This document shows, in pieces, positions 5,666-59,287 of a stretch of 64,000 nucleotides of DNA (position 1 is its first letter; every line of letters starts with the position of its first letter). This DNA comes from Glycera tridactyla. Its lineage: Eukaryota. The notes beneath the pieces are model-generated. The model saw nothing but the letters and a program-made list of their open reading frames with translations, had not been told where the DNA came from and did not search any database. The stretch is taken from positions 51,460,001 through 51,524,000 of the forward strand of contig OZ286462.1 of the NCBI GenBank assembly GCA_965644265.1. The letters run 5' to 3'. The translations under genes were made by a program, and so were the position numbers.

Positions 5666-6604
5666 TTATGTGTGATTGTCTGTGGGTCTTTTGCAGGCCT
5701 TATTCTGGTAGATTATTTCAAGAAATGCCTTTCGAAATTGTGAACTTCTCCAGCCATATACTAAAGGGTTGACACAGCAATTACAATGCCAAATAAATGA
5801 GACAACAGGTGCACATCGTCCATAATCTTCTGGTCCTAAGACTCCACACATGATCAGTGTTATGGATAGTACATATGGGAGTGTCAGAAGGATATATAAC
5901 CCAATCACACATGCACCCATCTTCAAGATCTTCATACCATTACTGGCTGGGACAAAACCAACCCCTACAGGGCGCACTTCAACTATATTCCTCCTCCATG
6001 CTTCTCTGAATATCAAGCTATACATTGAGATAAGTATTATATATGTGAGCCATAGACCAACACAAGACCAAAGTATCTCTGAGAATTGCCAAGTCGATTC
6101 ATCCATGCACCGTCTGTCCCCCGTTTCCACCTGAATTTGGTATCCAGTATAACCCAGAGTTATAATCCACAAAGAGCCAGTAACATACACACACCTCTTC
6201 TTTGTTACATAGATATAATACTTGAGTGGATGCATGATGAATATGTAGCGATCAATTGCAATCAGCAACACTGCAAATATATTACCATAGGCGTAGCATC
6301 CTATCAAAAATGTATAAATCTCACAGAACACATCCACTGTCTTTTGAGATTGTCCAAGGTCGTAATGAACAACAAAATAGGCCACAGATCCTGGCTGAGA
6401 TAGGACATCACAAATTGCTAAGTACAGAATCAGGATATTCGATATAGTTTGCAAGTTTTCAAACCGATAAATAGCATACATTGTCAGGGAATTACCAATG
6501 AGGGACATGAATCCCACAATAATCCGCAATATAGTGAAGACTTCCATCATGAAAGGTTCTGGGGTATTCAAGGAGTTGCTGTTGTTGCCAGGAATGAGAG
6601 TCAT
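5666..6604 (-). CDS. Intronless class A GPCR (array gene 1), 312 aa
   Basis: Seven hydrophobic segments; GN (TM1), LAICD (TM2), C3.25, AIDRY, ECL2 Cys (DRRC), TLPY (TM6), NPLVY, helix-8 FRKAF; N-terminal NxS sequon. Confidence 0.95.
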   Translation of the reverse strand: MTLIPGNNSNSLNTPEPFMMEVFTILRIIVGFMSLIGNSLTMYAIYRFENLQTISNILILYLAICDVLSQPGSVAYFVVHYDLGQSQKTVDVFCEIYTFLIGCYAYGNIFAVLLIAIDRYIFIMHPLKYYIYVTKKRCVYVTGSLWIITLGYTGYQIQVETGDRRCMDESTWQFSEILWSCVGLWLTYIILISMYSLIFREAWRRNIVEVRPVGVGFVPASNGMKILKMGACVIGLYILLTLPYVLSITLIMCGVLGPEDYGRCAPVVSFIWHCNCCVNPLVYGWRSSQFRKAFLEIIYQNKACKRPTDNHT

Positions 6605-8059
6605 CCTAAAGTTTGCCTCTGAAACAGTGGATTATCCGATGTAAGCTGTCTCACATGGGGCATTTGACATCAGTGAAATGTTGGAACAATAGACATTTGT
6701 GCGTTCCCGTATGAATTATATCCGGTATAGATATGCAATGATATGTCTGTCATGCAACGAATGTTGGAAGTATCCATACTATTAAGTATAGTAAAATTCT
6801 TGTATGTTGCTGTATCACCCTCTCATTGCAGTATGGAATCGCATTGTTTGCTGTCTTATCAGGTCTTAACCAAGACCAATATCCAAGGCACCAAAGTCAC
6901 CAAATATGTAGGATAGTTCATAGAAATGTGAACTCTCATGGTAATCCTCTGTCTGATATCTTGATCCACGTATGTTGATGGGCCTTTTTGAGCCATGGTT
7001 CCAGGCCAGCCATCTGCTGGTGTAGTATGGTGCCTCGTATCTTGACTCCTGCATTGAGTTACACCATTGTGTGCACATTCGGTGTCAACATCAGGACAGT
7101 TGAGTATGTTGACAAAGCTAGCATGTTACCTTGCATATTGATGATACATCGTTTGATAGTCTTTATCGATTGGGCTCTCTGTTGATCATGAATGAAACCA
7201 CCTCCATCGGAATCCCACACCTCATCCTACATCAGCAGGCTGTTCAGTTGAGCTAACCGAGAAAACGTTCGCCAAATCCCCCATCAAATATTCTCTATCT
7301 CAAGGGTGTCGAAAAGGAATGGGGACCCTTTTTCCGTTACTAAACGTCAGCGATTGTTAGCTGCAACTGAAGACCCTGCTGATTATGGTGAAATGTGTTA
7401 GTCTGATCCTTTGACTGATGGTGAAGCCTCTACTCATAGTATATGTACTTCATGTTTAAATCAGGGCCGTGGTGACTAACTAGCATGTGAACTACCCAGT
7501 CCATCCCAATCTAGTCTGGATATACATGTTCAAATCATGAATTATAGATCTAGCAATGATGGGGCATATCCAGAAGATATACACATTCAAACACAAGTCA
7601 GAGGGACGGCATTGTATTCCCCAAGTTTGAGATGCCATATATTTCGTGCAGAGTGGATGCGAAGAATTGAAAGAGAAGAATACCATCAATAAAGAAAAAA
7701 TGTCGCCATCACACCCCACTCATGACTGACTCAGCAACAGCTGAAACAACACAAGCAAGTGGGACTGGTCATCAGTGAAATAGCTGACCAGGTATTTGGG
7801 CCTTCAATTCCCATACCCCTAAAGAAAGGAGACCTGGTGGCTGATCCGAGATAAAAAGAATCATCACTCCTGTCGGAAGCTAAGCCACATCCTGTCAGCA
7901 GCAAAATTATCCTAATGGATACGGTATCCTCCCTAAATAAGTGTGAGATACAAATATGAGAAAGAGGGGGAAGAATATCAGAGAATCATTGGTCGTGAAT
8001 GACAAAACATCGAAATGGATGCAAGGGGATTGAATTTGTGTGAAGATAAAAATAAATGT

Positions 8060-8810
8060 CACCAAACATCTTGTTTCTGATGATCTGTACTCCTCTAAGC
8101 GTACTACTAAAAGTCTGCCCATCTATTACACAGAATGCTGTAGATGACTGCACATTGTATGAGCTTATCTTCTTTGTCTTTGGGTTGGACTGGGAGGGTT
8201 CATATGGTTTGTTGGGGTCTGACTGCTCCTGCGACTGGTGTTTCTTGTCAACACGCCGTATTTTCTCTGTGGAACCCTCAATATAAGGTATGACTACCCT
8301 GCCTTTTGTTTTTTTTCTTTCTCCATGCCTGTCCCATCTGTTAGAGAGGTGCTCGTTAATTCTTCATCGCTCTCTTGGTTTTATTGAAGGCCCACACTTT
8401 GCAAGAGCGTCCATTATACGATTTTCTACGATTTTTCTGTCCTCTTCTTCTCATACTATGTTGGCATTCCTATCGAGGAGGGTTTGGGTCACTGACAATT
8501 TTTGACTACTATGCCTCTTAGTTTTTTTCTTTCTCCATGCCTTTCCCATCTGTTGGAAAGGTGCTGCATTAATTATTCATCGCTCTCTTGGTTTTATCGA
8601 AGGCCCACACTTCGCAAGAGCGTCCATTATATGATTGTCTTCGATTTTCCTGTACTCTTCTTCTTATACTATGTTGGCATTCCTATCTTGCAGGGTTTGG
8701 GTCACTGACAATTTTTGATGTAGAGGATGGTAAGAGCTGAATTTCAAATGTTGATGAGAATGAGTGGGCTCACGGTATAACAGCAATTTCATGGATCCAC
8801 CCCGCTATCT
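8060..8810 (-). mobile_element. Penelope-like retroelement fragment (RT C-terminus, linker, start of the GIY-YIG region), degenerate, with an internal 212-bp tandem duplication
   Basis: Minus-strand translation gives GSMKLLLYREPTHSHQHLKFSSYHPLHQKLSVTQTL..IV*EEE..ALAKCG, then KGRVVIPYIEGSTEKIRRV.KKH and, after a frameshift, RPQQTI*TLPVQPKDKEDK..CAVIYSILC. These match the characteristic PLE motifs. 8291-8502 is duplicated at 8503-8718. Confidence 0.85.
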
Positions 8811-8879
8811 CACCATGAGGGTGTCCTTGAAGAGAATATACCTTCCTTTTCAGGTTCATGAAACATTTTTCAAGGGTGC

Positions 8880-16219: not shown

Positions 16220-16224
<5 letters not shown>

Positions 16225-17342: not shown

Positions 17343-18290
17343 TCACTTGGTCTCCTTGTTCCTGCAGATGATGTCACGGAAAGCTCTTCGAAACTGTGAA
17401 CTCCTCCAGCCATATATGAATGGATTAACAAAGCAATTACAAAGCCAGACAGCTGAGACAGCTGCTGCACACTCGGGATAATCTTCCAGTTCCAGGATAC
17501 GACAGGCATTCAGTGTCAAGCACACCACATATGGGAGAGTCAGGATGATATACATCCCGATCACACATGCACCCATCTTCAAGATCTTCATACCATTAGT
17601 CGCTGGGACCATGTCAACTTCTAAAGGGCGCACTACCACTATATTTCTTCTCCATGCTACTCTAAATATGATACTATACATTAGAATGAGTGCAATATAT
17701 GTAAGCCATAGACTTACACAGTTGGCAAGCAGTTTCGAGTATCGTCCAGGAATGTCAAGTCTGCACCAAATATCCCCAGTCCAGGCATACATATCATAAC
17801 TAGTATACCCCAAAATCATAATCCACATGACAGCAAGGAAATATGCAAGTCTTTTCTCTGTTACATAGATATAATACTTGAGAGGGTGCAGGATAAATAT
17901 ATAGCGATCAATTGCTATTATCAGTACTCCAAATACATTACCATAGGCGTAACACTCGAGGATGAATGTATAAATCCGACAGAAAATCATTCCTGTCTCA
18001 TCAGATTGTCCCCAGTCATAATGGTAGGCAAAATAGGCCAAGGATCCTGGATGAGAAAGGATATCAACAATCGCTAAGTGCAGGATAGGAATGTTTGACA
18101 ATGTTTGCAGGTATTTATACTGATGGATAGCATGGATTGTCAGTGAATTGCCAAAAAGAGAAAGAAATCCGGATATGATACGCACTATGATAATGACTTC
18201 CTTCATGTCAGGTTCTGGGTTATGTGTTGTGTTGCTGTTGTTGGCAGAAATGGGTGCAATTTCAAAGTTTGACTCTGTATTCGTGGCCAT
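17343..18290 (-). CDS. Intronless class A GPCR (array gene 4), 315 aa
   Basis: 7TM pattern; FGN, LAIVD, FCR, AIDRY, TLPY, NPFIY, FRRAF; N-terminal NxS/T sequons. Confidence 0.95.
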   Translation of the reverse strand: MATNTESNFEIAPISANNSNTTHNPEPDMKEVIIIVRIISGFLSLFGNSLTIHAIHQYKYLQTLSNIPILHLAIVDILSHPGSLAYFAYHYDWGQSDETGMIFCRIYTFILECYAYGNVFGVLIIAIDRYIFILHPLKYYIYVTEKRLAYFLAVMWIMILGYTSYDMYAWTGDIWCRLDIPGRYSKLLANCVSLWLTYIALILMYSIIFRVAWRRNIVVVRPLEVDMVPATNGMKILKMGACVIGMYIILTLPYVVCLTLNACRILELEDYPECAAAVSAVWLCNCFVNPFIYGWRSSQFRRAFRDIICRNKETK

Positions 18291-24783: not shown

Positions 24784-27429
24784 TTATTTTATTTCATTTC
24801 TTCAACAGTAATACATATATTACAGTGCAATACAGTACAATGTAGTTACTTCACATTTGCCTTGGTCAAGAGGCTTCTCCAGTGAGACGAAAAATACTTC
24901 CATATTGTTATGATGTGAACACAGAGGGGATCTAGTTGACGGAAGTGGTTTCAGTGAGATGAACTGCAAATTCAACCGTTGGATACAAACATATCAGAGG
25001 CCATTGCTCTGCTTCCATAATTAGATTACCCATTTGCTTGATGGAAGCCATCCTCCAGCAAAATGTTCGTAGTTCAATTAGCAAATTTCATGCATTGTCT
25101 AAAATGAAGCAGAATATTCCTAAATTTAAACACTCCATTTGTACAATGCATTATTCACCTACTTTTCTGATATGATGATGTTAATTACGATGCCAAAACA
25201 AAGGCGAATGGGTTGCCAATATACCAAAATGATTGTCTCAGAGCTGTTGAAGATAGCAAAAATTGTAGATCAACACACCGATGTTCATTATTCTGTTTCC
25301 AAAGTTTTCATTTCTAGTGATATAAAGAATTTGGACATTGCAATACAAATCTATGATAATTTCAATATGTGAGGTCCTAAAACTCATGAACATCTATTCT
25401 GTAAAGCCAGAAAAATGTTAGTCCACATGTGACCAAATGTTGAGTGACACGCTTGCTGATCGCAATGTCCCCATATTTTACTTCTGTACTTCAAACCATT
25501 ATCATGTTATAGACAACTTGTGAATGCAGCGTGCCTTTGGAGTATAATATCCACCTCCGATGGTCTGTGAACTATGTATTCAGTATCATCCAGCAAGTAC
25601 TTAATCCACCGACCATGGTGATAATGGTTTTGGTATACAGGATGTTTTTGGTGTAGTTTGAATGATCATATCTATCAAATATAAAAGTTTTTCTCGAAAA
25701 ATAATTATATTGGTATTTCTGAAAGCCAATGGCTAGATTTTTGTGGTGTTTACTTGAGTATTGCAGTGTCGATTTTGACTGGCGTATAGATTATTTCTAA
25801 CATGCTCACTCTATGCATTACTTATAGTATGCAACAATATCAATGATCCAGATTAGAGAATCATGCAATTTGCTGAGACGTGTCACTGGTAAGCATTCAC
25901 CGATATTTTCGTCACCTTCACCATTCGTCAATTTGTTCATTTTATTGCCTTATTCACTCTTTCCTAGTCGAAATGTTTTTTGTAAGAGCATTTTGTATGA
26001 CCCAAGGGCAAATGCTCCATTGGATAAAAGTAAACAAAACGGGTGTCACCGATACGATGGCCGAGTCCACTAGGTGGTTTCACGGTATTGTTTCAGAAGG
26101 AGAAATTGGACACATTGATCAAGTATTTCCTGAGCCTCCTGAAATCCTCCTCCGAAGTACTATGCCCAATTAGCCCTGTTTCCGAGCATCAGCCTGATCT
26201 GTGTTATGGGGGGGGGGGGAGGGGGGACGGATGTGTTTGAACTGACAACTTTGTTCGATATTGACTGCTCGTAGATGATAATGTATAGAAAAGACAATAC
26301 ATAGATTTGTACATTGCATTTACTTCAGAATGCGTTATATAACACATATATCCGAACAACAAAAAACGTTATGTTCTACCAGACATTCCCCATTTGACTA
26401 CCCATCTGGTTCCTCATCATCTGTTGGTAGAGGTTTGAGATTGATTCTCGCAGAAGCAGGCTTTCATTTATCAGGAAAATATGGCATACATGATTTTCGA
26501 GTTTACACATATCAACAACCTTCCATGTATCAATCACATTTCTCTCTTGTTAGTTGATCATAATGACTCCCCTGTAAAATATGTCTAATATCATCTCACA
26601 TCATTGAAATGAATTTGAATATGTAATCAATTTGTAATCACCATCAACCCGGAAACACTTGTTCACTGGAGTAATTGTTCTATGTATATGAGTATACACC
26701 TAATGACGATATAAAATAAAGAATATCAAATCAATTCAATCAATCACGTGAGTGTAGCACGATAATCCGGTCATGGGTTCGACGTTCCAACATGCAGAGC
26801 AGTTCAAAGCTCCTTGTGAGTGTCAACGTCGCATGCATTATCACATGGATGTGCCATTTTCAGTGAAGTATCAGGTGTTGAGTATTGCGTGTGATACTTC
26901 ACAGCTGGATGAGAACTACTTTTAGATGATTTCTCCCCTAATCCATATGATAAAGGCGAGACTACATGACCGTGAGGTAAAAATCCAATGCCTCGAGACA
27001 TCCTGTGAAATTCACACCTTGTTTGGTATTGTGATTTTACTTCATGGCCATATAGTCTTGCTATATCGAATGGACACACAATAAATATTTGAGAGAAGTA
27101 GGGGATTGTCACTTGTGTTATGTCATCTTTAAACTGATTATCTACCTATAAGCAGAATAAACCCTGACGTGTCTGCATATTTACTCATTCATAAGTGAGG
27201 TCCAATATACCGATCTATACATGGCCATGAGGCGAAAGTAATTGTAGCATGAAGTATATAACACATACATCGTTTGAATATACATATTCAGTGTAATTGA
27301 TATGGTATGGCTTTTGTCAACTGATGTCATGGAATTTCATTGAATGATGAGATGGTGGATAGTAATGTGTTCCTCGCATGTGCGGAGGGAACATAGAAAA
27401 AAATATAGTGATGGGGCAATTTAGAAAGG

Positions 27430-27430
<1 letters not shown>

Positions 27431-27492
<62 letters not shown>
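27431..27492. repeat. (TG)31 microsatellite (copies at 29956-30021 and 32485-32558)
   Basis: Pure dinucleotide run in each triplication unit. Confidence 0.97.
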
Positions 27493-27494
<2 letters not shown>

Positions 27495-27638
27495 CGTGTC
27501 ATGGAGGGACACGGACGTAAGAGACAAACTTATGAACCCTTCTCTATGTTTCGGGTCTCCCTGTAGAGGCACTGGCCAAGCAATATGACCGATCTGAGAC
27601 ATGTGTTTGTGTGCACTTTTTGGCCATCATAAAATGGC

Positions 27639-27815
27639 AAAATATTCAGCTCTCTACCCTGTCGAATAAAGGGACTTTATCCACCATATCAACATAAAAT
27701 ATTCAGCTCTCTACCCTGTCGAATAAAGGGACTTTATCCACCATATCAACAGAAAATATTCAGCTCTCTACCCTGTCGAATAAAGGGACTTTATCCACCA
27801 TATCAACATAAAATA
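27639..27815. repeat. 57-bp tandem repeat x3 (also in units 2 and 3, near 30168 and 32705)
   Basis: AAAATATTCAGCTCTCTACCCTGTCGAATAAAGGGACTTTATCCACCATATCAACAT at 27639, 27696 and 27753, with no spacers. Confidence 0.95.
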
Positions 27816-27953
27816 TGCATTTCCGCGAAAGCGAATTTTCAACTTGTGATCGTGACTTATGCTACTTGTGTTACCGAATCATTCAATTTTCGAATGAAAT
27901 ACAAAATGTCACTGGTTCACTTCAGGTCGGATCTTGAAATGTATCTTTGAGTT

Positions 27954-28844
27954 TCATTTCCTGCACAGGATAGCAACGAATGCTTTGCGGAACTGTATGC
28001 TTCTCCAGCCATAAATCAATGGATTGACACAACAGTTGCAGTTGAAGAGGAAGAGAATGAGTGGGGAATAGTAATAGTAAGTATCCAGTTCGAGATGTCC
28101 AGCTGCAATTAGTGTATTAGAAATCAGATATGGAAGAATGAAGATCATATAAATCCCTATCACATATGCTCCCATTTTGAATATTTTCATACTGTTTGAG
28201 GCCGGGATTACACCTGTATTTGCAGGTCGTACCACCATGATGTTTCTCTTGCGAGCTACACGGAAGATGATGGAATATAAGAGAATGATTGACAGGCAAA
28301 TCATCCAGACAGTGCAGGTTGAAAGTATCAACTTGTACTCCTCACTGGGCATTTCAGCAATGCATCGTCTATCCAAATGTATCTCATAAACATCATAACC
28401 GATCAGTGCTAAATTTGCTAATCCCGAAGCGAGCATTATCAACACTAGCCTGTCTCTTGTTATATAGATATGATACTTCATGGGGTGTATGATGTACAGG
28501 TAGCGTTCCACAGCTATCAAAATGACCCCAGTGATATTCCCAAATGCAGAACATTCTACAAAGACTGCATACACCCGACAATTGATCATGGCTGCTGTGT
28601 GGGAAAGCCCCCAGTCAATGCTGATTACCATATACATGACGGAGACTGGATGTGAGAGTACATCAGCAATTGCTAGGTTCAGGATGGGGATATTGGATGG
28701 ACTCTGCAAATAGTCATACTTGAAAATGGCATACATGGGAGGGGAGGGGGGACGGATGTGTTTGAACTGACAACTTTGTTCGATATTGACTGCTCGTAGA
28801 TGATAATGTATAGAAAAGACAATACATAGATTTGTACATTGCAT
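27954..28844 (-). pseudogene. 5'-truncated duplicate of GPCR gene 5 (no N-terminus or TM1), fused in frame to 36 junction-derived codons
   Basis: Identical to residues 46-305 of the 33020-33937 protein. The junction is at ~28735, and the frame stays open upstream to a true ATG at 28842-28844. Confidence 0.85.
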
Positions 28845-29954
28845 TTACTTCAGAATGCGTTATATAACACATATATCCGAACAACAAAAAACGTTATGTT
28901 CTACCAGACATTCCCCATTTGACTACCCATCTGGTTCCTCATCATCTGTTGGTAGAGGTTTGAGATTGATTCTCGCAGAAGCAGGCTTTCATTTATCAGG
29001 AAAATATGGCATACATGATTTTCGAGTTTACACATATCAACAACCTTCCATGTATCAATCACATTTCTCTCTTGTTAGTTGATCATAATGACTCCCCTGT
29101 AAAATATGTCTAATATCATCTCACATCATTGAAATGAATTTGAATATGTAATCAATTTGTAATCACCATCAACCCGGAAACACTTGTTCACTGGAGTAAT
29201 TGTTCTATGTATATGAGTATACACCTAATGACGATATAAAATAAAGAATATCAAATCAATTCAATCAATCACGTGAGTGTAGCACGATAATCCGGTCATG
29301 GGTTCGACGTTCCAACATGCAGAGCAGTTCAAAGCTCCTTGTGAGTGTCAACGTCGCATGCATTATCACATGGATGTGCCATTTTCAGTGAAGTATCAGG
29401 TGTTGAGTATTGCGTGTGATACTTCACAGCTGGATGAGAACTACTTTTAGATGATTTCTCCCCTAATCCATATGATAAAGGCGAGACTACATGACCGTGA
29501 GGTAAAAATCCAATGCCTCGAGACATCCTGTGAAATTCACACCTTGTTTGGTATTGTGATTTTACTTCATGGCCATATAGTCTTGCTATATCGAATGGAC
29601 ACACAATAAATATTTGAGAGAAGTAGGGGATTGTCACTTGTGTTATGTCATCTTTAAACTGATTATCTACCTATAAGCAGAATAAACCCTGACGTGTCTG
29701 CATATTTACTCATTCATAAGTGAGGTCCAATATACCGATCTATACATGGCCATGAGGCAAAAGTAATTGTAGCATGAAGTATATAACACATACATCGTTT
29801 GAATATACATATTCAGTGTAATTGATATGGTATGGCTTTTGTCAACTGATGTCATGGAATTTCATTGAATGATGAGATGGTGGATAGTAATGTGTTCCTC
29901 GCATGTGCGGAGGGAACATAGAAAAAAATATAGTGATGGGGCAATTTAGAAAGG

Positions 29955-30023
<69 letters not shown>

Positions 30024-30482
30024 CGTGTCATGGAGGGACACGGACGTAAGAGACAAACTTATGAACCCTTCTCTATGTTTCGGGTCTCCCTGTAGAGGCA
30101 CTGGCCAAGCAATATGACCGATCTGAGACATGTGTTTGTGTGCACTTTTTGGCCATCATAAAATGGCAAAATATTCAGCTCTCTACCCTGTCGAATAAAG
30201 GGACTTTATCCACCATATCAACATAAAATATTCAGCTCTCTACCCTGTCGAATAAAGGGACTTTATCCACCATATCAACAGAAAATATTCAGCTCTCTAC
30301 CCTGTCGAATAAAGGGACTTTATCCACCATATCAACATAAAATATGCATTTCCGCGAAAGCGAATTTTCAACTTGTGATCGTGACTTATGCTACTTGTGT
30401 TACCGAATCATTCAATTTTCGAATGAAATACAAAATGTCACTGGTTCACTTCAGGTCGGATCTTGAAATGTATCTTTGAGTT

Positions 30483-31373
30483 TCATTTCCTGCACAGGAT
30501 AGCAACGAATGCTTTGCGGAACTGTATGCTTCTCCAGCCATAAATCAATGGATTGACACAACAGTTGCAGTTGAAGAGGAAGAGAATGAGTGGGGAATAG
30601 TAATAGTAAGTATCCAGTTCGAGATGTCCAGCTGCAATTAGTGTATTAGAAATCAGATATGGAAGAATGAAGATCATATAAATCCCTATCACATATGCTC
30701 CCATTTTGAATATTTTCATACTGTTTGAGGCCGGGATTACACCTGTATTTGCAGGTCGTACCACCATGATGTTTCTCTTGCGAGCTACACGGAAGATGAT
30801 GGAATATAAGAGAATGATTGACAGGCAAATCATCCAGACAGTGCAGGTTGAAAGTATCAACTTGTACTCCTCACTGGGCATTTCAGCAATGCATCGTCTA
30901 TCCAAATGTATCTCATAAACATCATAACCGATCAGTGCTAAATTTGCTAATCCCGAAGCGAGCATTATCAACACTAGCCTGTCTCTTGTTATATAGATAT
31001 GATACTTCATGGGGTGTATGATGTACAGGTAGCGTTCCACAGCTATCAAAATGACCCCAGTGATATTCCCAAATGCAGAACATTCTACAAAGACTGCATA
31101 CACCCGACAATTGATCATGGCTGCTGTGTGGGAAAGCCCCCAGTCAATGCTGATTACCATATACATGACGGAGACTGGATGTGAGAGTACATCAGCAATT
31201 GCTAGGTTCAGGATGGGGATATTGGATGGACTCTGCAAATAGTCATACTTGAAAATGGCATACATGGGAGGGGAGGGGGGACGGATGTGTTTGAACTGAC
31301 AACTTTGTTCGATATTGACTGCTCGTAGATGATAATGTATAGAAAAGACAATACATAGATTTGTACATTGCAT
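30483..31373 (-). pseudogene. Second 5'-truncated duplicate of GPCR gene 5, with the same chimeric ORF
   Basis: Translation is identical to 27954-28844; junction at ~31264. Confidence 0.85.
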
Positions 31374-32483
31374 TTACTTCAGAATGCGTTATATAACACA
31401 TATATCCGAACAACAAAAAACGTTATGTTCTACCAGACATTCCCCATTTGACTACCCATCTGGTTCCTCATCATCTGTTGGTAGAGGTTTGAGATTGATT
31501 CTCGCAGAAGCAGGCTTTCATTTATCAGGAAAATATGGCATACATGATTTTCGAGTTTACACATATCAACAACCTTCCATGTATCAATCACATTTCTCTC
31601 TTGTTAGTTGATCATAATGACTCCCCTGTAAAATATGTCTAATATCATCTCACATCATTGAAATGAATTTGAATATGTAATCAATTTGTAATCACCATCA
31701 ACCCGGAAACACTTGTTCACTGGAGTAATTGTTCTATGTATATGAGTATACACCTAATGACGATATAAAATAAAGAATATCAAATCAATTCAATCAATCA
31801 CGTGAGTGTAGCACGATAATCCGGTCATGGGTTCGACGTTCCAACATGCAGAGCAGTTCAAAGCTCCTTGTGAGTGTCAACGTCGCATGCATTATCACAT
31901 GGATGTGCCATTTTCAGTGAAGTATCAGGTGTTGAGTATTGCGTGTGATACTTCACAGCTGGATGAGAACTACTTTTAGATGATTTCTCCCCTAATCCAT
32001 ATGATAAAGGCGAGACTACATGACCGTGAGGTAAAAATCCAATGCCTCGAGACATCCTGTGAAATTCACACCTTGTTTGGTATTGTGATTTTACTTCATG
32101 GCCATATAGTCTTGCTATATCGAATGGACACACAATAAATATTTGAGAGAAGTAGGGGATTGTCACTTGTGTTATGTCATCTTTAAACTGATTATCTACC
32201 TATAAGCAGAATAAACCCTGACGTGTCTGCATATTTACTCATTCATAAGTGAGGTCCAATATACCGATCTATACATGGCCATGAGGCAAAAGTAATTGTA
32301 GCATGAAGTATATAACACATACATCGTTTGAATATACATATTCAGTGTAATTGATATGGTATGGCTTTTGTCAACTGATGTCATGGAATTTCATTGAATG
32401 ATGAGATGGTGGATAGTAATGTGTTCCTCGCATGTGCGGAGGGAACATAGAAAAAAATATAGTGATGGGGCAATTTAGAAAGG

Positions 32484-32560
<77 letters not shown>

Positions 32561-33019
32561 CGTGTCATGGAGGGACACGGACGTAAGAGACAAACTTATG
32601 AACCCTTCTCTATGTTTCGGGTCTCCCTGTAGAGGCACTGGCCAAGCAATATGACCGATCTGAGACATGTGTTTGTGTGCACTTTTTGGCCATCATAAAA
32701 TGGCAAAATATTCAGCTCTCTACCCTGTCGAATAAAGGGACTTTATCCACCATATCAACATAAAATATTCAGCTCTCTACCCTGTCGAATAAAGGGACTT
32801 TATCCACCATATCAACAGAAAATATTCAGCTCTCTACCCTGTCGAATAAAGGGACTTTATCCACCATATCAACATAAAATATGCATTTCCGCGAAAGCGA
32901 ATTTTCAACTTGTGATCGTGACTTATGCTACTTGTGTTACCGAATCATTCAATTTTCGAATGAAATACAAAATGTCACTGGTTCACTTCAGGTCGGATCT
33001 TGAAATGTATCTTTGAGTT

Positions 33020-33937
33020 TCATTTCCTGCACAGGATAGCAACGAATGCTTTGCGGAACTGTATGCTTCTCCAGCCATAAATCAATGGATTGACACAACA
33101 GTTGCAGTTGAAGAGGAAGAGAATGAGTGGGGAATAGTAATAGTAAGTATCCAGTTCGAGATGTCCAGCTGCAATTAGTGTATTAGAAATCAGATATGGA
33201 AGAATGAAGATCATATAAATCCCTATCACATATGCTCCCATTTTGAATATTTTCATACTGTTTGAGGCCGGGATTACACCTGTATTTGCAGGTCGTACCA
33301 CCATGATGTTTCTCTTGCGAGCTACACGGAAGATGATGGAATATAAGAGAATGATTGACAGGCAAATCATCCAGACAGTGCAGGTTGAAAGTATCAACTT
33401 GTACTCCTCACTGGGCATTTCAGCAATGCATCGTCTATCCAAATGTATCTCATAAACATCATAACCGATCAGTGCTAAATTTGCTAATCCCGAAGCGAGC
33501 ATTATCAACACTAGCCTGTCTCTTGTTATATAGATATGATACTTCATGGGGTGTATGATGTACAGGTAGCGTTCCACAGCTATCAAAATGACCCCAGTGA
33601 TATTCCCAAATGCAGAACATTCTACAAAGACTGCATACACCCGACAATTGATCATGGCTGCTGTGTGGGAAAGCCCCCAGTCAATGCTGATTACCATATA
33701 CATGACGGAGACTGGATGTGAGAGTACATCAGCAATTGCTAGGTTCAGGATGGGGATATTGGATGGACTCTGCAAATAGTCATACTTGAAAATGGCATAC
33801 ATGGTCAACGAATTGCCAAAGAGTGACAGCAATCCCTGCAGCAATCGCACTACTATAAAAATGTCCAACATCAGGGGCTCCAGAACCTGTGTTTGGTTGC
33901 TATTGTTGGATACATTCGATGAAATGGTCATAGCCAT
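33020..33937 (-). CDS. Intronless class A GPCR (array gene 5), 305 aa; full-length parent of the truncated copies
   Basis: 7TM pattern; FGN, LAIAD, NCR, AVERY, ILPY, NPLIY, FRKAF; NxS/T sequons in the N-terminus. Confidence 0.95.
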   Translation of the reverse strand: MAMTISSNVSNNSNQTQVLEPLMLDIFIVVRLLQGLLSLFGNSLTMYAIFKYDYLQSPSNIPILNLAIADVLSHPVSVMYMVISIDWGLSHTAAMINCRVYAVFVECSAFGNITGVILIAVERYLYIIHPMKYHIYITRDRLVLIMLASGLANLALIGYDVYEIHLDRRCIAEMPSEEYKLILSTCTVWMICLSIILLYSIIFRVARKRNIMVVRPANTGVIPASNSMKIFKMGAYVIGIYMIFILPYLISNTLIAAGHLELDTYYYYSPLILFLFNCNCCVNPLIYGWRSIQFRKAFVAILCRK

Positions 33938-35160: not shown

Positions 35161-36090
35161 TCAATTGTGAGGGCCTATCCTTGAAATTCGCCTCCTGGTC
35201 AAGATGATGAGAAAAGCTTTGCGAAACTGCTGGTTCTGCCAGCAGTATATGACTGGGTTGATGTAGCAGTTAGTGTTCCATAATGCGAGAATAAGGGCCG
35301 AATAATTGTAATAACTCTCCAGGGTTATCAGACTGCCAGCAATTAGTGTAAGACACACAACATAGGGTAAAGTGTAGACAATATAAAGTCCTATCACGCA
35401 AGCAGCCATCTTGAAGATCTTGATGCCATTTGAGGTTGAAGTGAAGTGCATGGAGACTGTCCGCACATCTATGGTATTCAATTTACGTGCTAAGTTGAAT
35501 ATCAAACTGTATACCACAATCAGTGTGCTGTATGTACACCAGAGGCTAGTACAGTAAAATATAATCTGATAGAATTGGGTTGGTATCTCAGGATTGCATT
35601 GATGGTTTGGGGTCAACTCGTATGTACTCCAGAAAGAAAGCATAAAGATCACCATCCACACAAAACATGTTATAAACACGAGTCTCTTCTTTGTGATATG
35701 GGCGCGATATTTCATAGGATGTGCGATGTACATATAACGTTCATTTGCTATCATGCAAATCCAAAACATGTTACCTACAGCGGCAATGTTTATTGTGAAT
35801 GCATACACCTGGCAGATGATCAGAAGTATGTCTTCGGAGATACCACATTCATAGCTTATAATGGTGTACATGATAGCAATTGGGAGGCAAATGATATCTG
35901 TACTAGCCAGATGCACAATAAAGATGTTGGATAAGGTTTGCAAGTGTTCAAACTTGGAGACAGCATATATTGTGAGTGAATTGCCGAACAGTGATAGGGA
36001 GCCTAGGAAGATTCGAACAGCGATGAAAAACTCGAGCATGAAAGGTCTAACAAAATGGTTCGGACTACTGCTGCTAGTTTCATTCAACAT
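35161..36090 (-). CDS. Intronless class A GPCR (array gene 6), 309 aa from the first ATG
   Basis: The ORF-track start at 36126 is TTG; the first ATG is at 36088-36090 (MLNETSSS). Motifs: FGN, LASTD, ICQ, ANERY, TLPY, NPVIY, FRKAF. Confidence 0.93.
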   Translation of the reverse strand: MLNETSSSSPNHFVRPFMLEFFIAVRIFLGSLSLFGNSLTIYAVSKFEHLQTLSNIFIVHLASTDIICLPIAIMYTIISYECGISEDILLIICQVYAFTINIAAVGNMFWICMIANERYMYIAHPMKYRAHITKKRLVFITCFVWMVIFMLSFWSTYELTPNHQCNPEIPTQFYQIIFYCTSLWCTYSTLIVVYSLIFNLARKLNTIDVRTVSMHFTSTSNGIKIFKMAACVIGLYIVYTLPYVVCLTLIAGSLITLESYYNYSALILALWNTNCYINPVIYCWQNQQFRKAFLIILTRRRISRIGPHN

Positions 36091-44390: not shown

Positions 44391-45362
44391 TTATTCACAA
44401 TTGTTCCTATAATTCCCTAGAGTTGCAATCTCGATTTTGTTTATTAATGGTGAAGTTCTCTGATTCCTGCCTAAGATGACGAGGAAAGCTTTGCGGAACA
44501 GTTGACCTTGCCAGCAGTATATCAAAGGGTTGATACAGCAGTTCATATTCCACAATGCCAGGATAGCTGTCGAATAATAGTGATATTTCTCTCTTGTAAG
44601 GTAACCTAAGGCAATCAATGTGACTGATATTGTATAAGGCGAGGAACATGCAATGTATATCCCTACTACACATGCACCCATCTTGAAGATCTTCATGCCA
44701 TTTGAGGGTGGGATGAACTTTACTTGGACTGGCTGCACAATTATTGTATTCATTCTACGTGCCAAATTAAATATTAAACTGTATACAAGTATGAGTGTGA
44801 GGTATATACCCCAGATAACGATGCAGTAGGAAACTATCTGAGCAAAATCACTTGGGATTTCAGCAGAGCAGCGACTGTCTGGGATCGTCTTATACATATG
44901 CCAAGCAACTAGCCCCAGTAGTGTAATCCATACCAAACACATCACAACCAAGAGTTTGTTCTTTGTAGTATAGACATGATATTTCATAGGATGCATGATG
45001 TACATGTAACGTTCAGATGCTATGAGACCAACTCCAAATACGTTTCCGTAAGCCATGCAGTCGATTGTAAATGTGTAGATTCGGCAGCAGATGATGGTCA
45101 TCTCACCAGATAAGCCCAAGTCATAGGTTATCAGTGTATACAAAACTGAGCAAGGTTGACTCAGGGTATCTGAGAATGCCAGATGCAGAATGAAGATATT
45201 GGACGTGGTTTACAAATATTCAAATTTGGCGACAGCATAGATTGTCAGAAGATTGCCAACAAGTGAGATCAAACCTTGAAAGATTCTCACAGTCACAAAG
45301 AAATCCACCATAAAGGGATCTGTAACCTGACGGAGACTGCTGTTGATGGAATCATTAGACAA
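44391..45362 (-). pseudogene. GPCR (array gene 7) with one premature stop; closest paralog of gene 8
   Basis: A single frame reads LSNDSINSS..DPFMVDFF..VGNLLTIYAVAKFEYL*TTSNIFILHLAFSD. TAA at 45210-45212 replaces the Q of the conserved LQT. The position matching gene 8's start is TTG (45360-45362), with an in-frame ATG at 45309-45311. The downstream frame is intact (ASERY, SSPY, NPLIY). Confidence 0.9.
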
Positions 45363-49818: not shown

Positions 49819-50808
49819 TTATTGAATTTGCCATTGATTTCTGATTGTCACCCTAGGTTTGGACAGAATATTTGACCCGATTGTGTTTGTTGCTGAAGAG
49901 ACACCTCGTCTTTTGCCGAGGATGATGAGGTAAGCCTTGCGGAATTGTTGAGATTTCCAGCCATATATCAGAGGGTTGATACAACAGTTTATATACCACA
50001 CTGCCAGAATTGCCGTGGAATAATAGTGAAAATCTTCTCTTGTAAGGTAACCGATGACAATCAATGTGACTGATATTGCATAAGGTAGTGAGCATGCAAT
50101 GTAGAGCCCCACTACACATGCACCCATCTTGAAGATCTTCATGCCATTCGAAGTTGGTGTAGAGTTCACTTGGACTGGTTGCACAATCATAGTATTCATT
50201 TTACGTGCGAAGTTGAATATCAAACTGTATACAAAAATAAGTGTAATGTATAGACACCAGTTACTGATGCAGTCCAATACAATCCGATAGAATTTAGATG
50301 AAATCTCAGCAGAGCAATAACTATCTGGGATCAACTCATACATATGCCAAGCTGTTAACCCCAAAATCGTAAGCCAGACCAAACAAATTGTAACCAATAT
50401 TTTCTTCCATGTAATATAGACATGATATTTCATGGGATGCATGATGTACAGATAACGTTCACATGCTATGAGCCAAACCCCGAATACATTTCCTGAAGCC
50501 ATGCAGAACATTGTGAATGCATAGATTTGGCAGCAGATGATGACCATCTCACCAGAAAATCCCCAGTCATAAGTAACTAGCGTATACAAAACAGAGCAAG
50601 GTTGACTCAAGCAATCTGAAAATGCCAGTTGCAGAATAAAGACATTGGACATGGTCTGCAAATGTTTGAATTTGAAAACAGCATATATTGTCAGGGAATT
50701 GCCAAAAAGTGAGATCAAACCTTGAAGGATTCTCACAGTCACAAAGAGTTCCACCATGAAAGGTTCTATGAACTGGCTGAGACTGCCGTTGATTGTATCG
50801 TTGGCCAT
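49819..50808 (-). CDS. Intronless class A GPCR (array gene 8), 329 aa
   Basis: 7TM pattern; FGN, LAFSD, CCQ, ACERY, SLPY, NPLIY, FRKAY; NDT and NGS sequons. Confidence 0.95.
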   Translation of the reverse strand: MANDTINGSLSQFIEPFMVELFVTVRILQGLISLFGNSLTIYAVFKFKHLQTMSNVFILQLAFSDCLSQPCSVLYTLVTYDWGFSGEMVIICCQIYAFTMFCMASGNVFGVWLIACERYLYIMHPMKYHVYITWKKILVTICLVWLTILGLTAWHMYELIPDSYCSAEISSKFYRIVLDCISNWCLYITLIFVYSLIFNFARKMNTMIVQPVQVNSTPTSNGMKIFKMGACVVGLYIACSLPYAISVTLIVIGYLTREDFHYYSTAILAVWYINCCINPLIYGWKSQQFRKAYLIILGKRRGVSSATNTIGSNILSKPRVTIRNQWQIQ

Positions 50809-55344: not shown

Positions 55345-55524
55345 NNNNNNNNNNNNNNNNNNNNNNNNNNNNNNNNNNNNNNNNNNNNNNNNNNNNNNNN
55401 NNNNNNNNNNNNNNNNNNNNNNNNNNNNNNNNNNNNNNNNNNNNNNNNNNNNNNNNNNNNNNNNNNNNNNNNNNNNNNNNNNNNNNNNNNNNNNNNNNNN
55501 NNNNNNNNNNNNNNNNNNNNNNNN
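55345..55524. other. Assembly gap (180 N)
   Basis: Run of N. Confidence 1.
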
Positions 55525-56760: not shown

Positions 56761-56829
56761 TGATCAAACCTTATTCATACTTCCTCGTAACTGAACGGAG
56801 CAGTTTCCATAGGCTACAGTGAGTATGTT

Positions 56830-58080
56830 ACAGATAACAGATAACAGATAACAGATACTTTATTTAAATTCTCGAGACACAGAAAGTTGCCTATATTAAC
56901 TGGGCACGAGAGCAGATGAGTAACAGGCGATATAAATTGTAACAATTCCATTTTTACCAGTATATAATCAGTATAGAGTCACTCGTATCACATTTATAAC
57001 ACAGGTTACTCAAGAGTGATCAATCCGTAGGGCATAATTCATGTGAATAAATCAAGCAGTCAATAGAAAGCCGTCAAAAAACATCACAAATATTATACGT
57101 AATAACACCTTGCCGTTTTAAATTTAGAGTTATTCTCAATGAGCGAGACCAGATATTGTGAGCAATTGAGCAAATGAACATATCGTAAATGTCAAGAGTT
57201 GCTCTTCAAAGATGTTTATTCAGAATCAAGTATTCACGCAGTTTGCATTTAAATGATGCAGTCGAAATTGCATCCATCAATGGAGTAGGTCTTTCATTCC
57301 ATGCCTTGATTGCTCTGGATATGAAAGAGGACTTCCCTTTCTCAGTCCTGTGCCTCGGGACTATCAAATTACCTCTCGTTAATGCTCGTGTTCTACCATA
57401 CTCTCTACCATATTCTGGCACATAAAGTGAAACTTGTTTAATTAAATTTTCGGAAGTTTCGCCACGTCTAACCTTGTACATCTCTAATAATAACTGGCGT
57501 TCCCTGATCAATGCTGGAGGGTAAAGATTGTTCATTGATAGCATTTCTTCCATGGAGACTGAGAAGTCTGACATAGTTACCACCCGTAACAGATCCCGAT
57601 ATGCTCTGTCCAGGCTCTGAAGTACAGAGGCACTAGCACCACCATAAATAACGTTTCCATAGTTCACACTACTCAATATGATTGACAGGGCTATTTGTCT
57701 GGCAGAGGCCAGGTTAATCAATCTTCTCACCCTCTTTAATTGCCACGTTCTAGCCCGTAGTTTGCCGATAACAGATTCCACATAGGGCTTATAAGTCAAA
57801 TGGCTGTCTAGCACAACACCAAGATATTTGAAATTAGACTTTTGCTCTAAATTTAGCACTTCACCAAGACACGTGTCTGGAGCTAGTTGTGTATTGAGTC
57901 TCTGACGTGTGCCAAAGAGTACACAACAGGATTTCGTTAAATTTACACTCAGTCTTTTACTTTTGAAAAATTTCTCCAGTTTTTTCATATCATGCAAAAG
58001 TCTTTGGCCGATCACGTCGACATTCTTGTGCGATACAAAAATGGCGGTGTCGTCGGCATACATTGATACTGTCGAAACAC
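56830..58080 (-). mobile_element. 5'-truncated CR1/L2-group LINE with an uninterrupted ORF2 C-terminus and a (TATCTGT)4 tail
   Basis: ORF 57206-58087 reads MYADDTAIFV..LSVNLTKS..FGTRQRL..FKYLGVVLDSHL..SFISRAIKAWN. A 3' UTR follows, then the tandem tail ACAGATA x4 at 56830-56857 on the plus strand. Confidence 0.9.
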
Positions 58081-58234
58081 TTGCCAACTACTACACCAAA
58101 CGCACTTCATCATATCATCATTATCTCACTAAGTCTCGTTGCATTGGCTTCTCAGTATGGCACCAGTGCCACTTAAAAATGAAGCAACGAATTTAATCGA
58201 CGTCTTCTGCTCAGATATAACTCTCGCTGACAGT

Positions 58235-59287
58235 TTAGGAAATGAATGTATTAGTGACAGATTCATTCATTCTAGTCGCGATCTCGACCCGACTGGCCTG
58301 ACTCCTACAGAGGATGACCAGGAAGGCTCGGCGAAATTGCTTGCTTCTCCAACAGAAGATCAAGGGATTGGCGGCACAATTGATATTCCACAGAAACAGT
58401 AGGGGCTGGGAATAATGAAAATAAGTGTCCATATCGAGATAACTGGCTGTGACAAGAGTGAGTGCTATTGTATAGGGTAGGGTGCAGACAATATATACCC
58501 CTATCACGCATGCACCCATCTTGAAGATTTTCATGCCATTTGAAGTGATGGCCATTTTAACTCCTACGGGATGTACAACCATAAGGTTTCTCCGGCGTGC
58601 AACCCGAAAGACGTAGCCATACGTCCAAGCAAGCGTGATGTATATGTTCCAGATGAGGAAGGCAATCATTACCTGCCAATACCAGCCACTCGGAATCTCT
58701 GGAGTACACGGATTGGGTGACAAAAAAGAGAGGTCTGTCCCAACCAGGACCAAGGTACCAATCCAGACAGAAGCAACAGCAAAGTATAGTCTTTTCCCTG
58801 TGATATACAGATGATACTTCAAGGGGAATATTATAAACATGAATCTTTCGAATGCTATCAAAGCGACTCCGAACATATTGCCGGAAGCTGAGCATTCCAG
58901 AAAGAATGCATATATCCTACAACATGCCTCGGCCACCCTCTCTGACTGGCCCCAGTCATAGTTTATGACAATAACTAAGACAGAGAGAGGTTGTGACAGG
59001 ATATCAGAGATTGCCAAGTGGACAATAAGGATGTTGGACAAGGTCTGTAAGTTCTGAAACTTGGCAATAGCATAAACCGTCAGTAAATTGCCAAGAAGGG
59101 AGAAAAGGCCCAAGACAACTCGCGCTGTAATAAAAAAATCCAGCATAAAAGGCTTGAATGATTCAGTGATGTTACTACTGTTAGCCTCGATGTCTGATCC
59201 AGTCTGTGATGATAGGTGATCCATGAGCACCAGGCAGATGATTCCTATCCTAGCAATGACTGACCATTCCAATATATCAGAATTCAT
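58235..59287 (-). CDS. Intronless class A GPCR (array gene 9), 350 aa (329 aa if initiated at the ATG at 59222-59224)
   Basis: 7TM pattern; LGN, LAISD, CCR, AFERF, TLPY, NPLIF, FRRAF. The second Met gives an N-terminus closer in length to the paralogs. Confidence 0.93.
   Translation of the reverse strand: MNSDILEWSVIARIGIICLVLMDHLSSQTGSDIEANSSNITESFKPFMLDFFITARVVLGLFSLLGNLLTVYAIAKFQNLQTLSNILIVHLAISDILSQPLSVLVIVINYDWGQSERVAEACCRIYAFFLECSASGNMFGVALIAFERFMFIIFPLKYHLYITGKRLYFAVASVWIGTLVLVGTDLSFLSPNPCTPEIPSGWYWQVMIAFLIWNIYITLAWTYGYVFRVARRRNLMVVHPVGVKMAITSNGMKIFKMGACVIGVYIVCTLPYTIALTLVTASYLDMDTYFHYSQPLLFLWNINCAANPLIFCWRSKQFRRAFLVILCRSQASRVEIATRMNESVTNTFIS

What the first reader, a model, noticed from the sequence alone, without database searches (positions are those of the whole stretch)
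5666..59287. Birth-and-death array of one divergent, intronless class A GPCR family (candidate lineage-specific chemoreceptor cluster)
Seen: 11 co-oriented loci of one family, comprising 7 complete, 2 disabled and 2 truncated copies. All share private motifs: xP(F/D/L)M before TM1, GN in TM3, NxMK(I/L)xKMxAxVxG before TM6, and a very short ECL2. Known: intronless tandem clusters with frequent pseudogenes are typical of rapidly evolving chemosensory GPCR expansions. Inference: this is an orphan receptor family without one-to-one orthologs, possibly chemosensory.
Basis: partly seen in the sequence, partly recalled or inferred. Interest (0 to 1): 0.7.

Follow-up and report, generated by a model that had tools for sequence, protein, structure and literature searches.

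The report
Annelid orphan GPCR tandem gene array
A marine-worm (annelid) chromosome carries a head-to-tail row of 17 single-exon receptor genes and gene wrecks of one private family; the array is real and still duplicating, but it is an already described kind of lineage-specific receptor expansion, and its proposed smell or taste role could not be tested.

Summary
The finding's range has 11 co-oriented (minus-strand) loci of one rhodopsin-class GPCR family: 7 intact, 2 disabled and 2 5'-truncated. The array is larger than reported: 17 loci over about 89 kb, past both window edges, plus one dispersed copy on another chromosome. The N gap at 55345-55524 lies in intergenic DNA and touches no copy.

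The host is an annelid, shown by mitochondrial gene order. Intact copies keep the signalling core and are under purifying selection (dN/dS 0.2-0.36), strongest at the G-protein face and weakest at ECL2 (0.85). They lack the aminergic Asp3.32 and the opsin Lys7.43.

In a tree with the 36 full-length proteins among the 41 best hits from 1.84 billion public representatives, the array forms an exclusive clade. Solved receptors score a flat 87-105 bits. "Orphan, lineage-specific, birth-and-death" is therefore supported.

Two details need correcting. The TM6 motif is not private, because most external relatives share it. ECL2 is short (14 aa), not very short.

A chemosensory role is untested: no RNA runs were listed. 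Tandem class-A GPCR expansions with full-length, truncated and pseudogene members are already described for annelids (Simakov 2013; Nath 2025), so this is a new member of a known kind. Another note of this scan (s1-329860) had already flagged the 2.5-kb triplication inside the array.

The parts
5666..6604 (-). Intact GPCR gene A (312 aa), left-block subfamily
   Evidence: Uninterrupted ORF from ATG to stop; 7tm_1 E=5.8e-31; family HMM 547 bits
11784..12749 (-). Intact GPCR gene B (321 aa)
   Evidence: 7tm_1 E=3.1e-31; family HMM 522 bits
13902..14754 (-). Pseudogene, closest to B (80% identity over the first 153 aa); three reading frames, one stop, TM7 and helix 8 missing
   Evidence: tblastn pieces in frames -2, -1 and -3; HMM positions 2-269 only; translation
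17343..18290 (-). Intact GPCR gene C (315 aa)
   Evidence: 7tm_1 E=4.3e-29
26212..33811 (.). Three head-to-tail copies of a unit of about 2.53 kb (the 3' 790 bp of gene F plus 1.74 kb of downstream DNA). The copies differ by one substitution and by (TG)n length.
   Evidence: the repeat finder spacing 2525/2529/2537; three-way alignment 99% identical
27954..28745 (-). 5'-truncated copy D (matches F residues 43-305; no TM1). The listed ORF extends to 28844 through junction-derived sequence.
30483..31274 (-). 5'-truncated copy E, identical to D
33020..33937 (-). Intact GPCR gene F (305 aa), parent of D and E; the only copy with Gly instead of Trp at 4.50
   Evidence: 7tm_1 E=4.5e-27; residue table
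35161..36090 (-). Intact GPCR gene G (309 aa from the first ATG)
44391..45362 (-). Recently disabled copy H: Leu codon where paralog I has its start Met, and one in-frame TAA after TM1; otherwise full length, 70% identical to I
49819..50808 (-). Intact GPCR gene I (329 aa); the protein modelled
   Evidence: 7tm_1 E=1.1e-29; AF2 pLDDT 88.6
55345..55524 (.). Assembly gap (180 N) in intergenic DNA between genes I and J; touches no family member
57206..58087 (-). Reverse-transcriptase fragment of a retroelement, 150 bp downstream of gene J; not part of the family
   Evidence: Pfam RVT_1 E=1.5e-7
58235..59287 (-). Intact GPCR gene J (350 aa from the first ATG; an internal Met 21 residues in is an alternative start), right-block subfamily
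   Evidence: 7tm_1 E=1.9e-25

Best explanation
This is a lineage-specific tandem array of orphan rhodopsin-class (class A) GPCR genes in an annelid genome. It holds 17 loci over about 89 kb (C10:51,443,749-51,533,086), and 11 of them fall in the finding's range.

The array grew by repeated unequal-crossover duplication of segments of about 2.5-8 kb that carried a single-coding-exon gene with its flanks. It loses members through frameshifts, nonsense mutations and truncating breakpoints, which is birth-and-death evolution. The newest event is a near-identical 2.5-kb triplication whose breakpoint inside gene F produced two copies lacking TM1.

The intact genes encode receptors that look able to signal. 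They have D2.50, (D/E)R(Y/F), Y5.58, NPxx(Y/F), helix 8 and the TM3-ECL2 cysteine pair. Selection holds the G-protein-facing half nearly fixed while ECL2 and the outer parts of TM3 and TM4 drift almost freely. I infer that the paralogs keep one common downstream coupling and differ in what they bind.

Shown: the family, the array, its dynamics, the selection pattern, and the absence of close public orthologs. Inferred: that ligands differ between paralogs. Not shown: ligand class and tissue. I put about 35-40% on external chemical cues (chemosensory). The remainder is split between lineage-specific endogenous ligands and other sensing roles.
For: Copies, strand and state.

Pfam 7tm_1 on the nine ORFs scanned.

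Fold: AF2 pLDDT 88.6, pTM 0.85, with 7TM plus helix 8. Foldseek finds class-A GPCRs at TM about 0.7.

Conserved signalling residues.

Tree: the array plus the C1 copy form a clade (89/98; 99% SH-aLRT). Subclades match chromosomal blocks, and the clade excludes the 36 full-length proteins among the 41 best hits from 1.84e9 representatives.

HMM scores: array members 470-545 bits, the C1 copy 414, the best public protein 324, the next 193.

Selection: dN/dS 0.20-0.36, with dN<dS at p=2e-7 to 1e-20 in five independent pairs. By region, omega is 0.85 in ECL2 against 0.08-0.09 in ICL2 and inner TM6. Entropy is 1.55 on the extracellular side against 0.98 on the intracellular side, p=1e-8.

Duplicated flanks extend 0.5-2.4 kb beyond the CDS. 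The triplication units differ by one SNP plus microsatellite length.

Host: the mitochondrial gene order matches the annelid-specific arrangement stated in PMC2639372.

Prior description of the kind: PMC4085046 and PMC11886862.
Against: There are no expression data: no sequencing run was listed, so transcription of any copy is unproven.

Genomes of related annelids could not be searched, so 'lineage-specific' rests on public protein sets whose coverage of this worm's relatives is unknown. The nearest hits carry no organism names.

Overall omega of 0.2-0.36 shows fairly ordinary purifying selection, and no partition exceeds 1.

The short ECL2 and retained TM3-ECL2 cysteines differ from the features Nath et al. 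report as typical of lophotrochozoan candidate chemoreceptor expansions.

The near-identity of the triplicated units could partly reflect mis-assembly.
Confidence: 0.88

Rival explanations
1. The array encodes receptors for endogenous ligands (lineage-specific neuropeptides, lipids or other internal signals), expanded for internal signalling and not for sensing the environment.
For: The best solved-structure matches are aminergic, peptide and adenosine receptors. The ESM Atlas nearest clusters are auto-named LPA receptors. The canonical TM3-ECL2 cysteines and a short, length-invariant ECL2 are unlike the long, disulfide-less ECL2 reported as typical of candidate chemosensory expansions. Purifying selection is clear. 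Capitella's tandem expansions were classed as peptide-receptor-like.
Against: Matches to solved receptors are flat (87-105 bits) and far below those to dozens of orphan paralogs. Asp3.32 is absent. No orthologs appear among the best public hits. Pseudogenisation is frequent and duplication is ongoing, and ECL2 evolves almost neutrally. All of this is unusual for receptors tied to a conserved internal ligand.
Confidence: 0.25
2. Part of the copy number is an assembly artefact. In particular, the two truncated copies D and E come from a falsely expanded 2.5-kb tandem repeat.
For: The three units are identical except for one base and (TG)n length. No reads could be obtained to check coverage or junctions.
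Against: The units differ in microsatellite length (periods 2525, 2529 and 2537) and by one substitution, and they share a defined junction inside the gene. All other copies are 20-55% diverged at the protein level, so they cannot be assembly duplicates.
Confidence: 0.15
3. The array is a decaying relic and its 'intact' ORFs are no longer functional genes.
For: In the full 17-locus array, 5 loci are broken or truncated. One intact copy (F) has lost Trp4.50. No expression evidence exists.
Against: All five independent pairs show dN significantly below dS. Twelve ORFs of 305-350 aa remain open despite dS of 0.3 to above 1. The signalling motifs are invariant.
Confidence: 0.04

Closest known systems
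Lineage-specific expansions (LSEs) of class-A GPCRs in Lophotrochozoa, including annelids (Nath et al. 2025, PMC11886862; Capitella tandem GPCR expansions, Simakov et al. 2013, PMC4085046)
   Same: Class-A 7tm_1 genes in tandem arrays. The clades are taxon-restricted and lack one-to-one orthologs. Members are a mix of full-length, truncated and pseudogene copies. Entropy is higher in the extracellular parts of the TM helices. A chemosensory role has been proposed but not demonstrated.
   Different: ECL2 is 13-14 aa, against the 25-30 aa reported as typical. Both TM3 (3.25) and ECL2 cysteines are invariant, whereas the paper reports the typical linkage as absent. The clade has its own conserved residues (M18, N3.39, N221, T6.48, Y6.51). 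Whether this particular family or species was in their data set could not be checked.
Vertebrate olfactory-type class-A chemoreceptor clusters (ORs, TAARs)
   Same: Single coding exon, tandem clusters, birth-and-death evolution with many pseudogenes, short N-terminus and C-tail, variable ligand-facing half.
   Different: There is no specific sequence relationship: TAARs score like any other class-A receptor. ECL2 is short where ORs have a long one. Asp3.32 of TAARs is absent. Omega is lower than is usually reported for ORs. No sensory expression is known.
Melanocortin/MECA-like receptors (the name databases give to the nearest annotated coral relative)
   Same: No Pro5.50, short extracellular loops, short termini, intronless.
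   Different: Identity to the coral 'melanocortin receptor 5-like' protein is only 24%. ECL2 is 14 aa and not a few residues, and the TM3-ECL2 cysteine pair is retained. The name is an annotation transfer and is not evidence of relationship.
Nematode Srsx serpentine chemoreceptors (Pfam PF10320)
   Same: Most copies pass the Srsx gathering score (24-49 bits). Both are intronless or compact rhodopsin-like receptors.
   Different: The Srsx score is always far below the 7tm_1 score (89-109 bits), and Srsx is itself the most rhodopsin-like nematode family. The hit reflects generic class-A similarity, not membership.

Membership tests
Class A (rhodopsin-like) GPCR, Pfam 7tm_1 | Profile match above the curated cut-off over the whole 7TM core | tested here: met
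   71-109 bits against a cut-off of 30.5 for the nine ORFs scanned; profile positions 1-260 in the intact copies
Class A (rhodopsin-like) GPCR, Pfam 7tm_1 | Seven-helix bundle plus amphipathic helix 8 | tested here: met
   AF2 pLDDT 88.6, pTM 0.85, helices 19-46, 53-80, 86-123, 134-158, 173-207, 220-252, 257-285 and H8 287-296. Foldseek top 500 hits are all at E<=0.001, and the 50 listed are all class-A GPCRs.
Class A (rhodopsin-like) GPCR, Pfam 7tm_1 | Signalling microswitches N1.50, D2.50, (D/E)RY, Y5.58, NPxxY | tested here: met
   Invariant N37, D65, R118, Y194, N278 and P279. Position 3.49 is D or E, 3.51 is Y or F, and 7.53 is Y or F.
Class A (rhodopsin-like) GPCR, Pfam 7tm_1 | CWxP toggle in TM6 and Pro5.50 | tested here: not met
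   Position 6.48 is T/S/I/V and 5.50 is T/I/L/V in all copies; P6.50 is kept. These features are common but not obligatory in class A, so membership stands.
Biogenic-amine receptors | Asp at 3.32 that binds the amine | tested here: not met
   I, L, V or M at 3.32 in all 13 copies
Opsins | Lys at 7.43 for the retinal Schiff base | tested here: not met
   H, Y, L, N or S at 7.43
Melanocortin-type receptors | ECL2 of only a few residues and no C3.25-ECL2 disulfide (from established knowledge of MC4R structures, recalled) | tested here: not met
   ECL2 is 13-14 aa; C93 (3.25) and C165 are invariant
Lophotrochozoan class-A lineage-specific expansion (as defined in PMC11886862) | A paralog clade restricted to one taxon, without one-to-one orthologs | tested here: inconclusive
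   The clade excludes the 36 full-length proteins among the 41 best hits from 1.84e9 public representatives. Genomes of related annelids were not available to search.
Lophotrochozoan class-A lineage-specific expansion (as defined in PMC11886862) | Tandem genomic clustering with full-length, truncated and pseudogene members | tested here: met
   17 co-oriented loci in 89 kb: 12 intact, 3 disabled, 2 truncated
Chemosensory receptor (functional class) | Expression in chemosensory cells or organs | not testable with these tools
   No RNA or DNA run was listed for this stretch, so read laying could not be used
Chemosensory receptor (functional class) | Activation by external chemical cues | not testable with these tools
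   Requires heterologous expression and ligand screening

The most novel reading that the evidence does not exclude
The array is a hitherto undescribed annelid chemoreceptor family with its own architecture: a compact ECL2 of fixed length tied by the canonical disulfide, Asn3.39, Thr6.48 and Tyr6.51, and no Pro5.50. This differs from the long-ECL2, disulfide-less type reported as typical of lophotrochozoan candidate chemoreceptors. Its near-neutral ECL2 and ongoing duplication would then reflect tuning to external small molecules. If so, it would offer a tractable set of 12 close paralogs for the first deorphanisation of an annelid GPCR chemoreceptor.
Probability: 0.3. Interest if true: 0.55.

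Novelty: new member of a known kind. Interest (0 to 1): 0.3.

Why it matters
Which proteins annelids use to smell and taste is still open. Tandem class-A GPCR expansions have been proposed for this role since the Capitella genome paper, and I found no study that validates any of them. This array is a clean, well-delimited example with 12 intact close paralogs. It shows a clear split between a conserved signalling half and a fast-evolving ligand-facing loop, and it has a very recent duplication, so it could serve as a test set for expression mapping and deorphanisation. As a genomic phenomenon it adds no new principle: the same pattern has been catalogued in 32 annelid and over 200 other lophotrochozoan genomes.

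Tried and rejected
- Expression test: the look-up of sequencing runs listed no run, so read laying was not usable.
- The listing of cluster members, used twice, returned no organism names for 19 of 20 proteins. The only named one is a catfish multi-domain gene model, P0006.
- The word-indexed protein search is too insensitive for this family: 3 hits with a single sequence and 7 with a profile. The exhaustive HMM search was used instead.
- Host identification by HSP70 failed, with 85-86% identity across phyla.
- COX1 could not be used in the protein search. Its 12 TGA codons leave stop-free pieces of at most 68 aa, and I did not read through the stops. Mitochondrial gene order was used instead.
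- Affiliation with aminergic receptors, opsins and melanocortin-type receptors was considered and rejected on diagnostic residues and loop length.
- A retrocopy origin for the dispersed C1 paralog could not be resolved: similarity is confined to the CDS and there is no clear poly(A) tail.
- Pfam annotation of ten other window ORFs found nothing convincing.
- A phylogeny against named deorphanised receptors was not built, because no reference sequences were available by id and typing them from memory is unreliable. Profile and fold searches against the PDB stand in for it.
- Site-model (codeml-type) tests were not run because the software was not available. Region-pooled Nei-Gojobori counts were used instead.
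Full report
**What is there.**

ORF listing, tblastn with the family's own proteins, and a family HMM run without filters on all six frames agree. The finding's range holds 11 loci of one protein family, all on the minus strand, plus a 132-bp fragment at 26188-26319 that is simply the end of a repeat unit.

- Seven loci are uninterrupted ORFs of 305-350 aa running from a Met to a stop and covering N-terminus to helix 8. They are therefore single-coding-exon genes: 5666-6604, 11784-12749, 17343-18290, 33020-33937, 35161-36090, 49819-50808 and 58235-59287.
- Two loci are disabled. 13902-14754 switches frame three times, has a stop, and lacks TM7 and helix 8. 44391-45362 is full length but has Leu where its nearest paralog has the start Met, and a single TAA after TM1.
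- Two loci (27954-28745 and 30483-31274) are identical and lack the first 42 residues, including TM1.

The nine ORFs scanned against Pfam 7tm_1 match at E 1e-19 to 1e-31. These are the seven intact copies, one of the two identical truncated copies, and the long ORF of the copy disabled by a stop.

**The gap.**

The N run at 55345-55524 lies between genes I (ends 50808) and J (starts 58235). The nearest real family match is more than 2.7 kb away, and nothing above noise abuts the gap. A second gap at 60204-60416 is also intergenic. No conclusion here depends on continuity across either gap. A copy hidden in a gap whose true size is unknown cannot be excluded.

**The array is larger than the finding.**

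Searching the window's own 2.04-Gb genome and fetching the flanks shows 17 loci, all on the minus strand, over about 89 kb (window coordinates -16,251 to 73,086; C10:51,443,749-51,533,086). About 44 kb on the left and 37 kb on the right are free of the family.

The six extra loci comprise five intact genes and one frameshifted pseudogene. In one of the intact genes the tail after helix 8 is frameshifted. One further member sits alone on contig C1 (55% identical to gene I). More distant paralog clusters lie at C10:28.25 Mb, C11, C1:86.2 Mb, C13 and C32. Genome-wide, the 7tm_1 profile gave 3,502 first-look candidates, of which only 147 were scored. This is one of many class-A loci.

**Host.**

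Earlier notes of this scan call the genome annelid. I tested this. The 15,366-bp mitochondrial contig has all genes on one strand, in this order: cox1-N-cox2-D-atp8-Y-cox3-Q-nad6-cob-W-atp6-R-H-nad5-F-E-P-T-nad4L-nad4-C-G-M-rrnS-V-rrnL-S2-L1-A-L2-nad1-I-K-nad3-S1-nad2.

PMC2639372 states the arrangement that sets annelids apart: nad6/cob right after cox3, atp6 between cob and nad5, nad5 before nad4L/nad4, and nad3 between nad1 and nad2. It restricts the last three features to annelids and their kin. All four are met. PMC10405356 reports one dominant order in 110 of 149 annelids. An HSP70 search was uninformative.

**How the array evolved.**

In a maximum-likelihood tree the array plus the C1 copy form one clade (89/98; 99% SH-aLRT when 36 external sequences are added). 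Its subclades follow chromosomal position:

- the six leftmost intact genes;
- F with its truncated copies;
- G and I with the C1 copy (H is closest to I at 70% identity; it was not in the tree);
- J with the two genes to its right.

Between close paralogs, nucleotide similarity continues 0.5-0.6 kb upstream and 0.1-0.3 kb downstream of the CDS, and more than 1.5 kb on both sides for the rightmost pair. Whole segments were copied. Synonymous divergence runs from 0.3 to saturation.

The youngest event is a 2.53-kb unit present three times at 26212-33811. The copies differ by one substitution and by the length of a (TG)n tract, and the junction lies inside gene F. That junction is why D and E lack TM1. 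Without reads I cannot exclude that this part is over-assembled, but the length differences and the defined junction argue for real copies. Another note of this scan (s1-329860) had already flagged this triplication.

Copy H carries only two lesions, and a rough three-taxon split gives its branch the same dN/dS as its intact sister. It was therefore disabled recently.

**What the proteins look like.**

With a 134-sequence alignment AlphaFold2 gives a confident model (pLDDT 88.6, pTM 0.85): seven helices plus helix 8, an N-terminal tail of about 18 residues, ECL2 of 14 residues without a hairpin, ICL3 of 12, ECL3 of 4, and a short C-tail. Foldseek against the PDB returns only class-A GPCRs (A2A, beta1/beta2, opioid, ghrelin, orexin) at TM about 0.7 and 18-24% identity, none standing out.

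- Invariant residues: N1.50, D2.50, C3.25, G3.38, N3.39, R3.50, the ECL2 Cys, Y5.58, P6.50, Y6.51, N7.49, P7.50 and F8.50.
- Position 3.49 is D or E; 3.51 and 7.53 are Y or F.
- Missing in every copy: W6.48 (T/S/I/V instead) and P5.50 (T/I/L/V instead).
- Position 3.32 is hydrophobic, so these are not amine receptors. Position 7.43 is never Lys, so they are not opsins.

All are present, but not all are private.

- K224, K227, M228, V232 and G234 of the pre-TM6 motif occur in 70-80% of 114 external relatives.
- N3.39 occurs in 43 of those 114.
- Specific to this genome's clade: N221, T6.48 and the Pro before TM1. Y6.51 is invariant in the array but present in only 2 of 8 own paralogs, and M18 is limited to the array and one paralog.
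- ECL2 is 13-14 residues in the array, a median of 16 in own-genome paralogs, and 18 (range 10-27) in external relatives. It is short and strikingly constant in length, but not 'very short'.

**Selection.**

Five phylogenetically independent pairs all show dN significantly below dS (omega 0.20-0.36; Fisher p 2e-7 to 1e-20), so the intact genes are maintained.

Pooled by structural element, constraint is strongest at ICL2 (0.08), inner TM6 (0.09), ICL1 (0.13) and inner TM7 (0.15). It is weakest at ECL2 (0.85), outer TM3 (0.55) and outer TM4 (0.54). Column entropy is 1.55 on the extracellular side against 0.98 on the intracellular side (p=1e-8).

This fits a common transducer with diversified ligand recognition. 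It is also what most ligand-diversified GPCR families show, and nothing exceeds omega of 1.

**Relatives elsewhere.**

A profile search that read all 1.84 billion representative proteins found 22,489 hits at E<=0.001 but only 37 below 1e-30. Array members score 470-545 bits and the C1 copy 414. The best public protein (P0004, unnamed, on a 1.7-kb NCBI contig) scores 324, and the next 193.

In the tree P0004 falls in the sister clade with the C10:28 Mb cluster, not in the array clade. Against the PDB the family profile gives a flat 87-105 bits for beta2 and alpha1A adrenergic, ghrelin, H2, D2 and A2A receptors. The ESM Atlas lists auto-named LPA-receptor and cnidarian orphan clusters.

The family is therefore orphan, and it does not nest one-to-one with conserved receptors.

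**Function.**

No sequencing run was listed for this stretch, so expression could not be examined.

For a chemosensory reading:
- tandem birth-and-death dynamics;
- no orthologs found;
- a fast-evolving ligand-facing loop;
- short termini;
- the precedent of such expansions being proposed as chemoreceptors in annelids.

Against it, or neutral:
- ordinary overall purifying selection;
- the retained TM3-ECL2 cysteines and compact ECL2, whereas Nath et al. report long ECL2 (25-30 aa) and no such linkage as typical of their candidate chemosensory expansions;
- other candidate chemoreceptor families in the same genome, according to another note of this scan (a gustatory-receptor-like array, not checked here).

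I put about 35-40% on external chemosensation.

**Novelty.**

Tandem expansions of rhodopsin-class GPCRs in annelids were reported for Capitella in 2013, with the chemosensory idea called 'tempting to speculate' (PMC4085046). A 2025 survey of 238 lophotrochozoan genomes found 88-889 lineage-specific class-A genes per marine annelid. [quoted passage not shown]

This array is a new, well-resolved member of that kind. It departs modestly in loop architecture and has an unusually fresh duplication. It is not a new kind of system.

Noticed in passing
window 26212-33811: A 2.53-kb unit is present three times head to tail and is almost identical (one substitution, (TG)n length differences). Each unit also holds a 57-bp x 3 minisatellite. 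The junction inside gene F sits beside a G-rich tract. Already noted by another finding of this scan (s1-329860).
   Followed up: partly
window 1201-2029: A 52-bp minisatellite with 16 copies (90% matches) creates an artefactual 253-aa repetitive ORF on the plus strand. Pfam hits to it are below cut-off.
   Followed up: partly
window 45459-45586: A 42-bp x 3 tandem repeat lies about 100 bp upstream of the disabled copy H, in the region where its promoter or 5'UTR would be.
   Followed up: no
window 33020-33937: Gene F (and its truncated copies D and E) has Gly instead of the near-universal Trp at 4.50. It is the only copy to do so, although its ORF is intact.
   Followed up: no
L034:8103-9056 (just right of the window, window coordinates about 72103-73056): This array member is intact through helix 8, but a frameshift replaces the C-tail. 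The ancestral tail (...RMNESVSNAFVS) is still readable in another frame.
   Followed up: partly
L003 (G000:C1:87940797-87941696): A single dispersed, intact member of the array's G/I subclade lies on another chromosome. Similarity to array genes is confined to the CDS, so whether it is a retrocopy or an old segmental copy is unresolved.
   Followed up: partly
window 57206-58087: A reverse-transcriptase (RVT_1) fragment of a retroelement lies 150 bp downstream of gene J on the same strand. Mobile elements in the spacers may promote unequal crossing-over.
   Followed up: no
G000:C207 (L047+L048), 15,366 bp: The complete mitochondrial contig has the conserved annelid protein and rRNA gene order. 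However, trnG has moved from between trnY and cox3 to between trnC and trnM, and the order after rrnL is S2-L1-A. The largest non-coding stretch, about 740 bp, lies between trnA and trnL2.
   Followed up: partly
P0006 (851 aa, catfish Hemibagrus wyckioides gene model): This is the only named protein among the 20 best hits looked up by cluster. It is a fish model with six partial matches to the family profile, probably several fused tandem orphan GPCRs. It suggests that similar orphan class-A arrays exist in teleosts.
   Followed up: no
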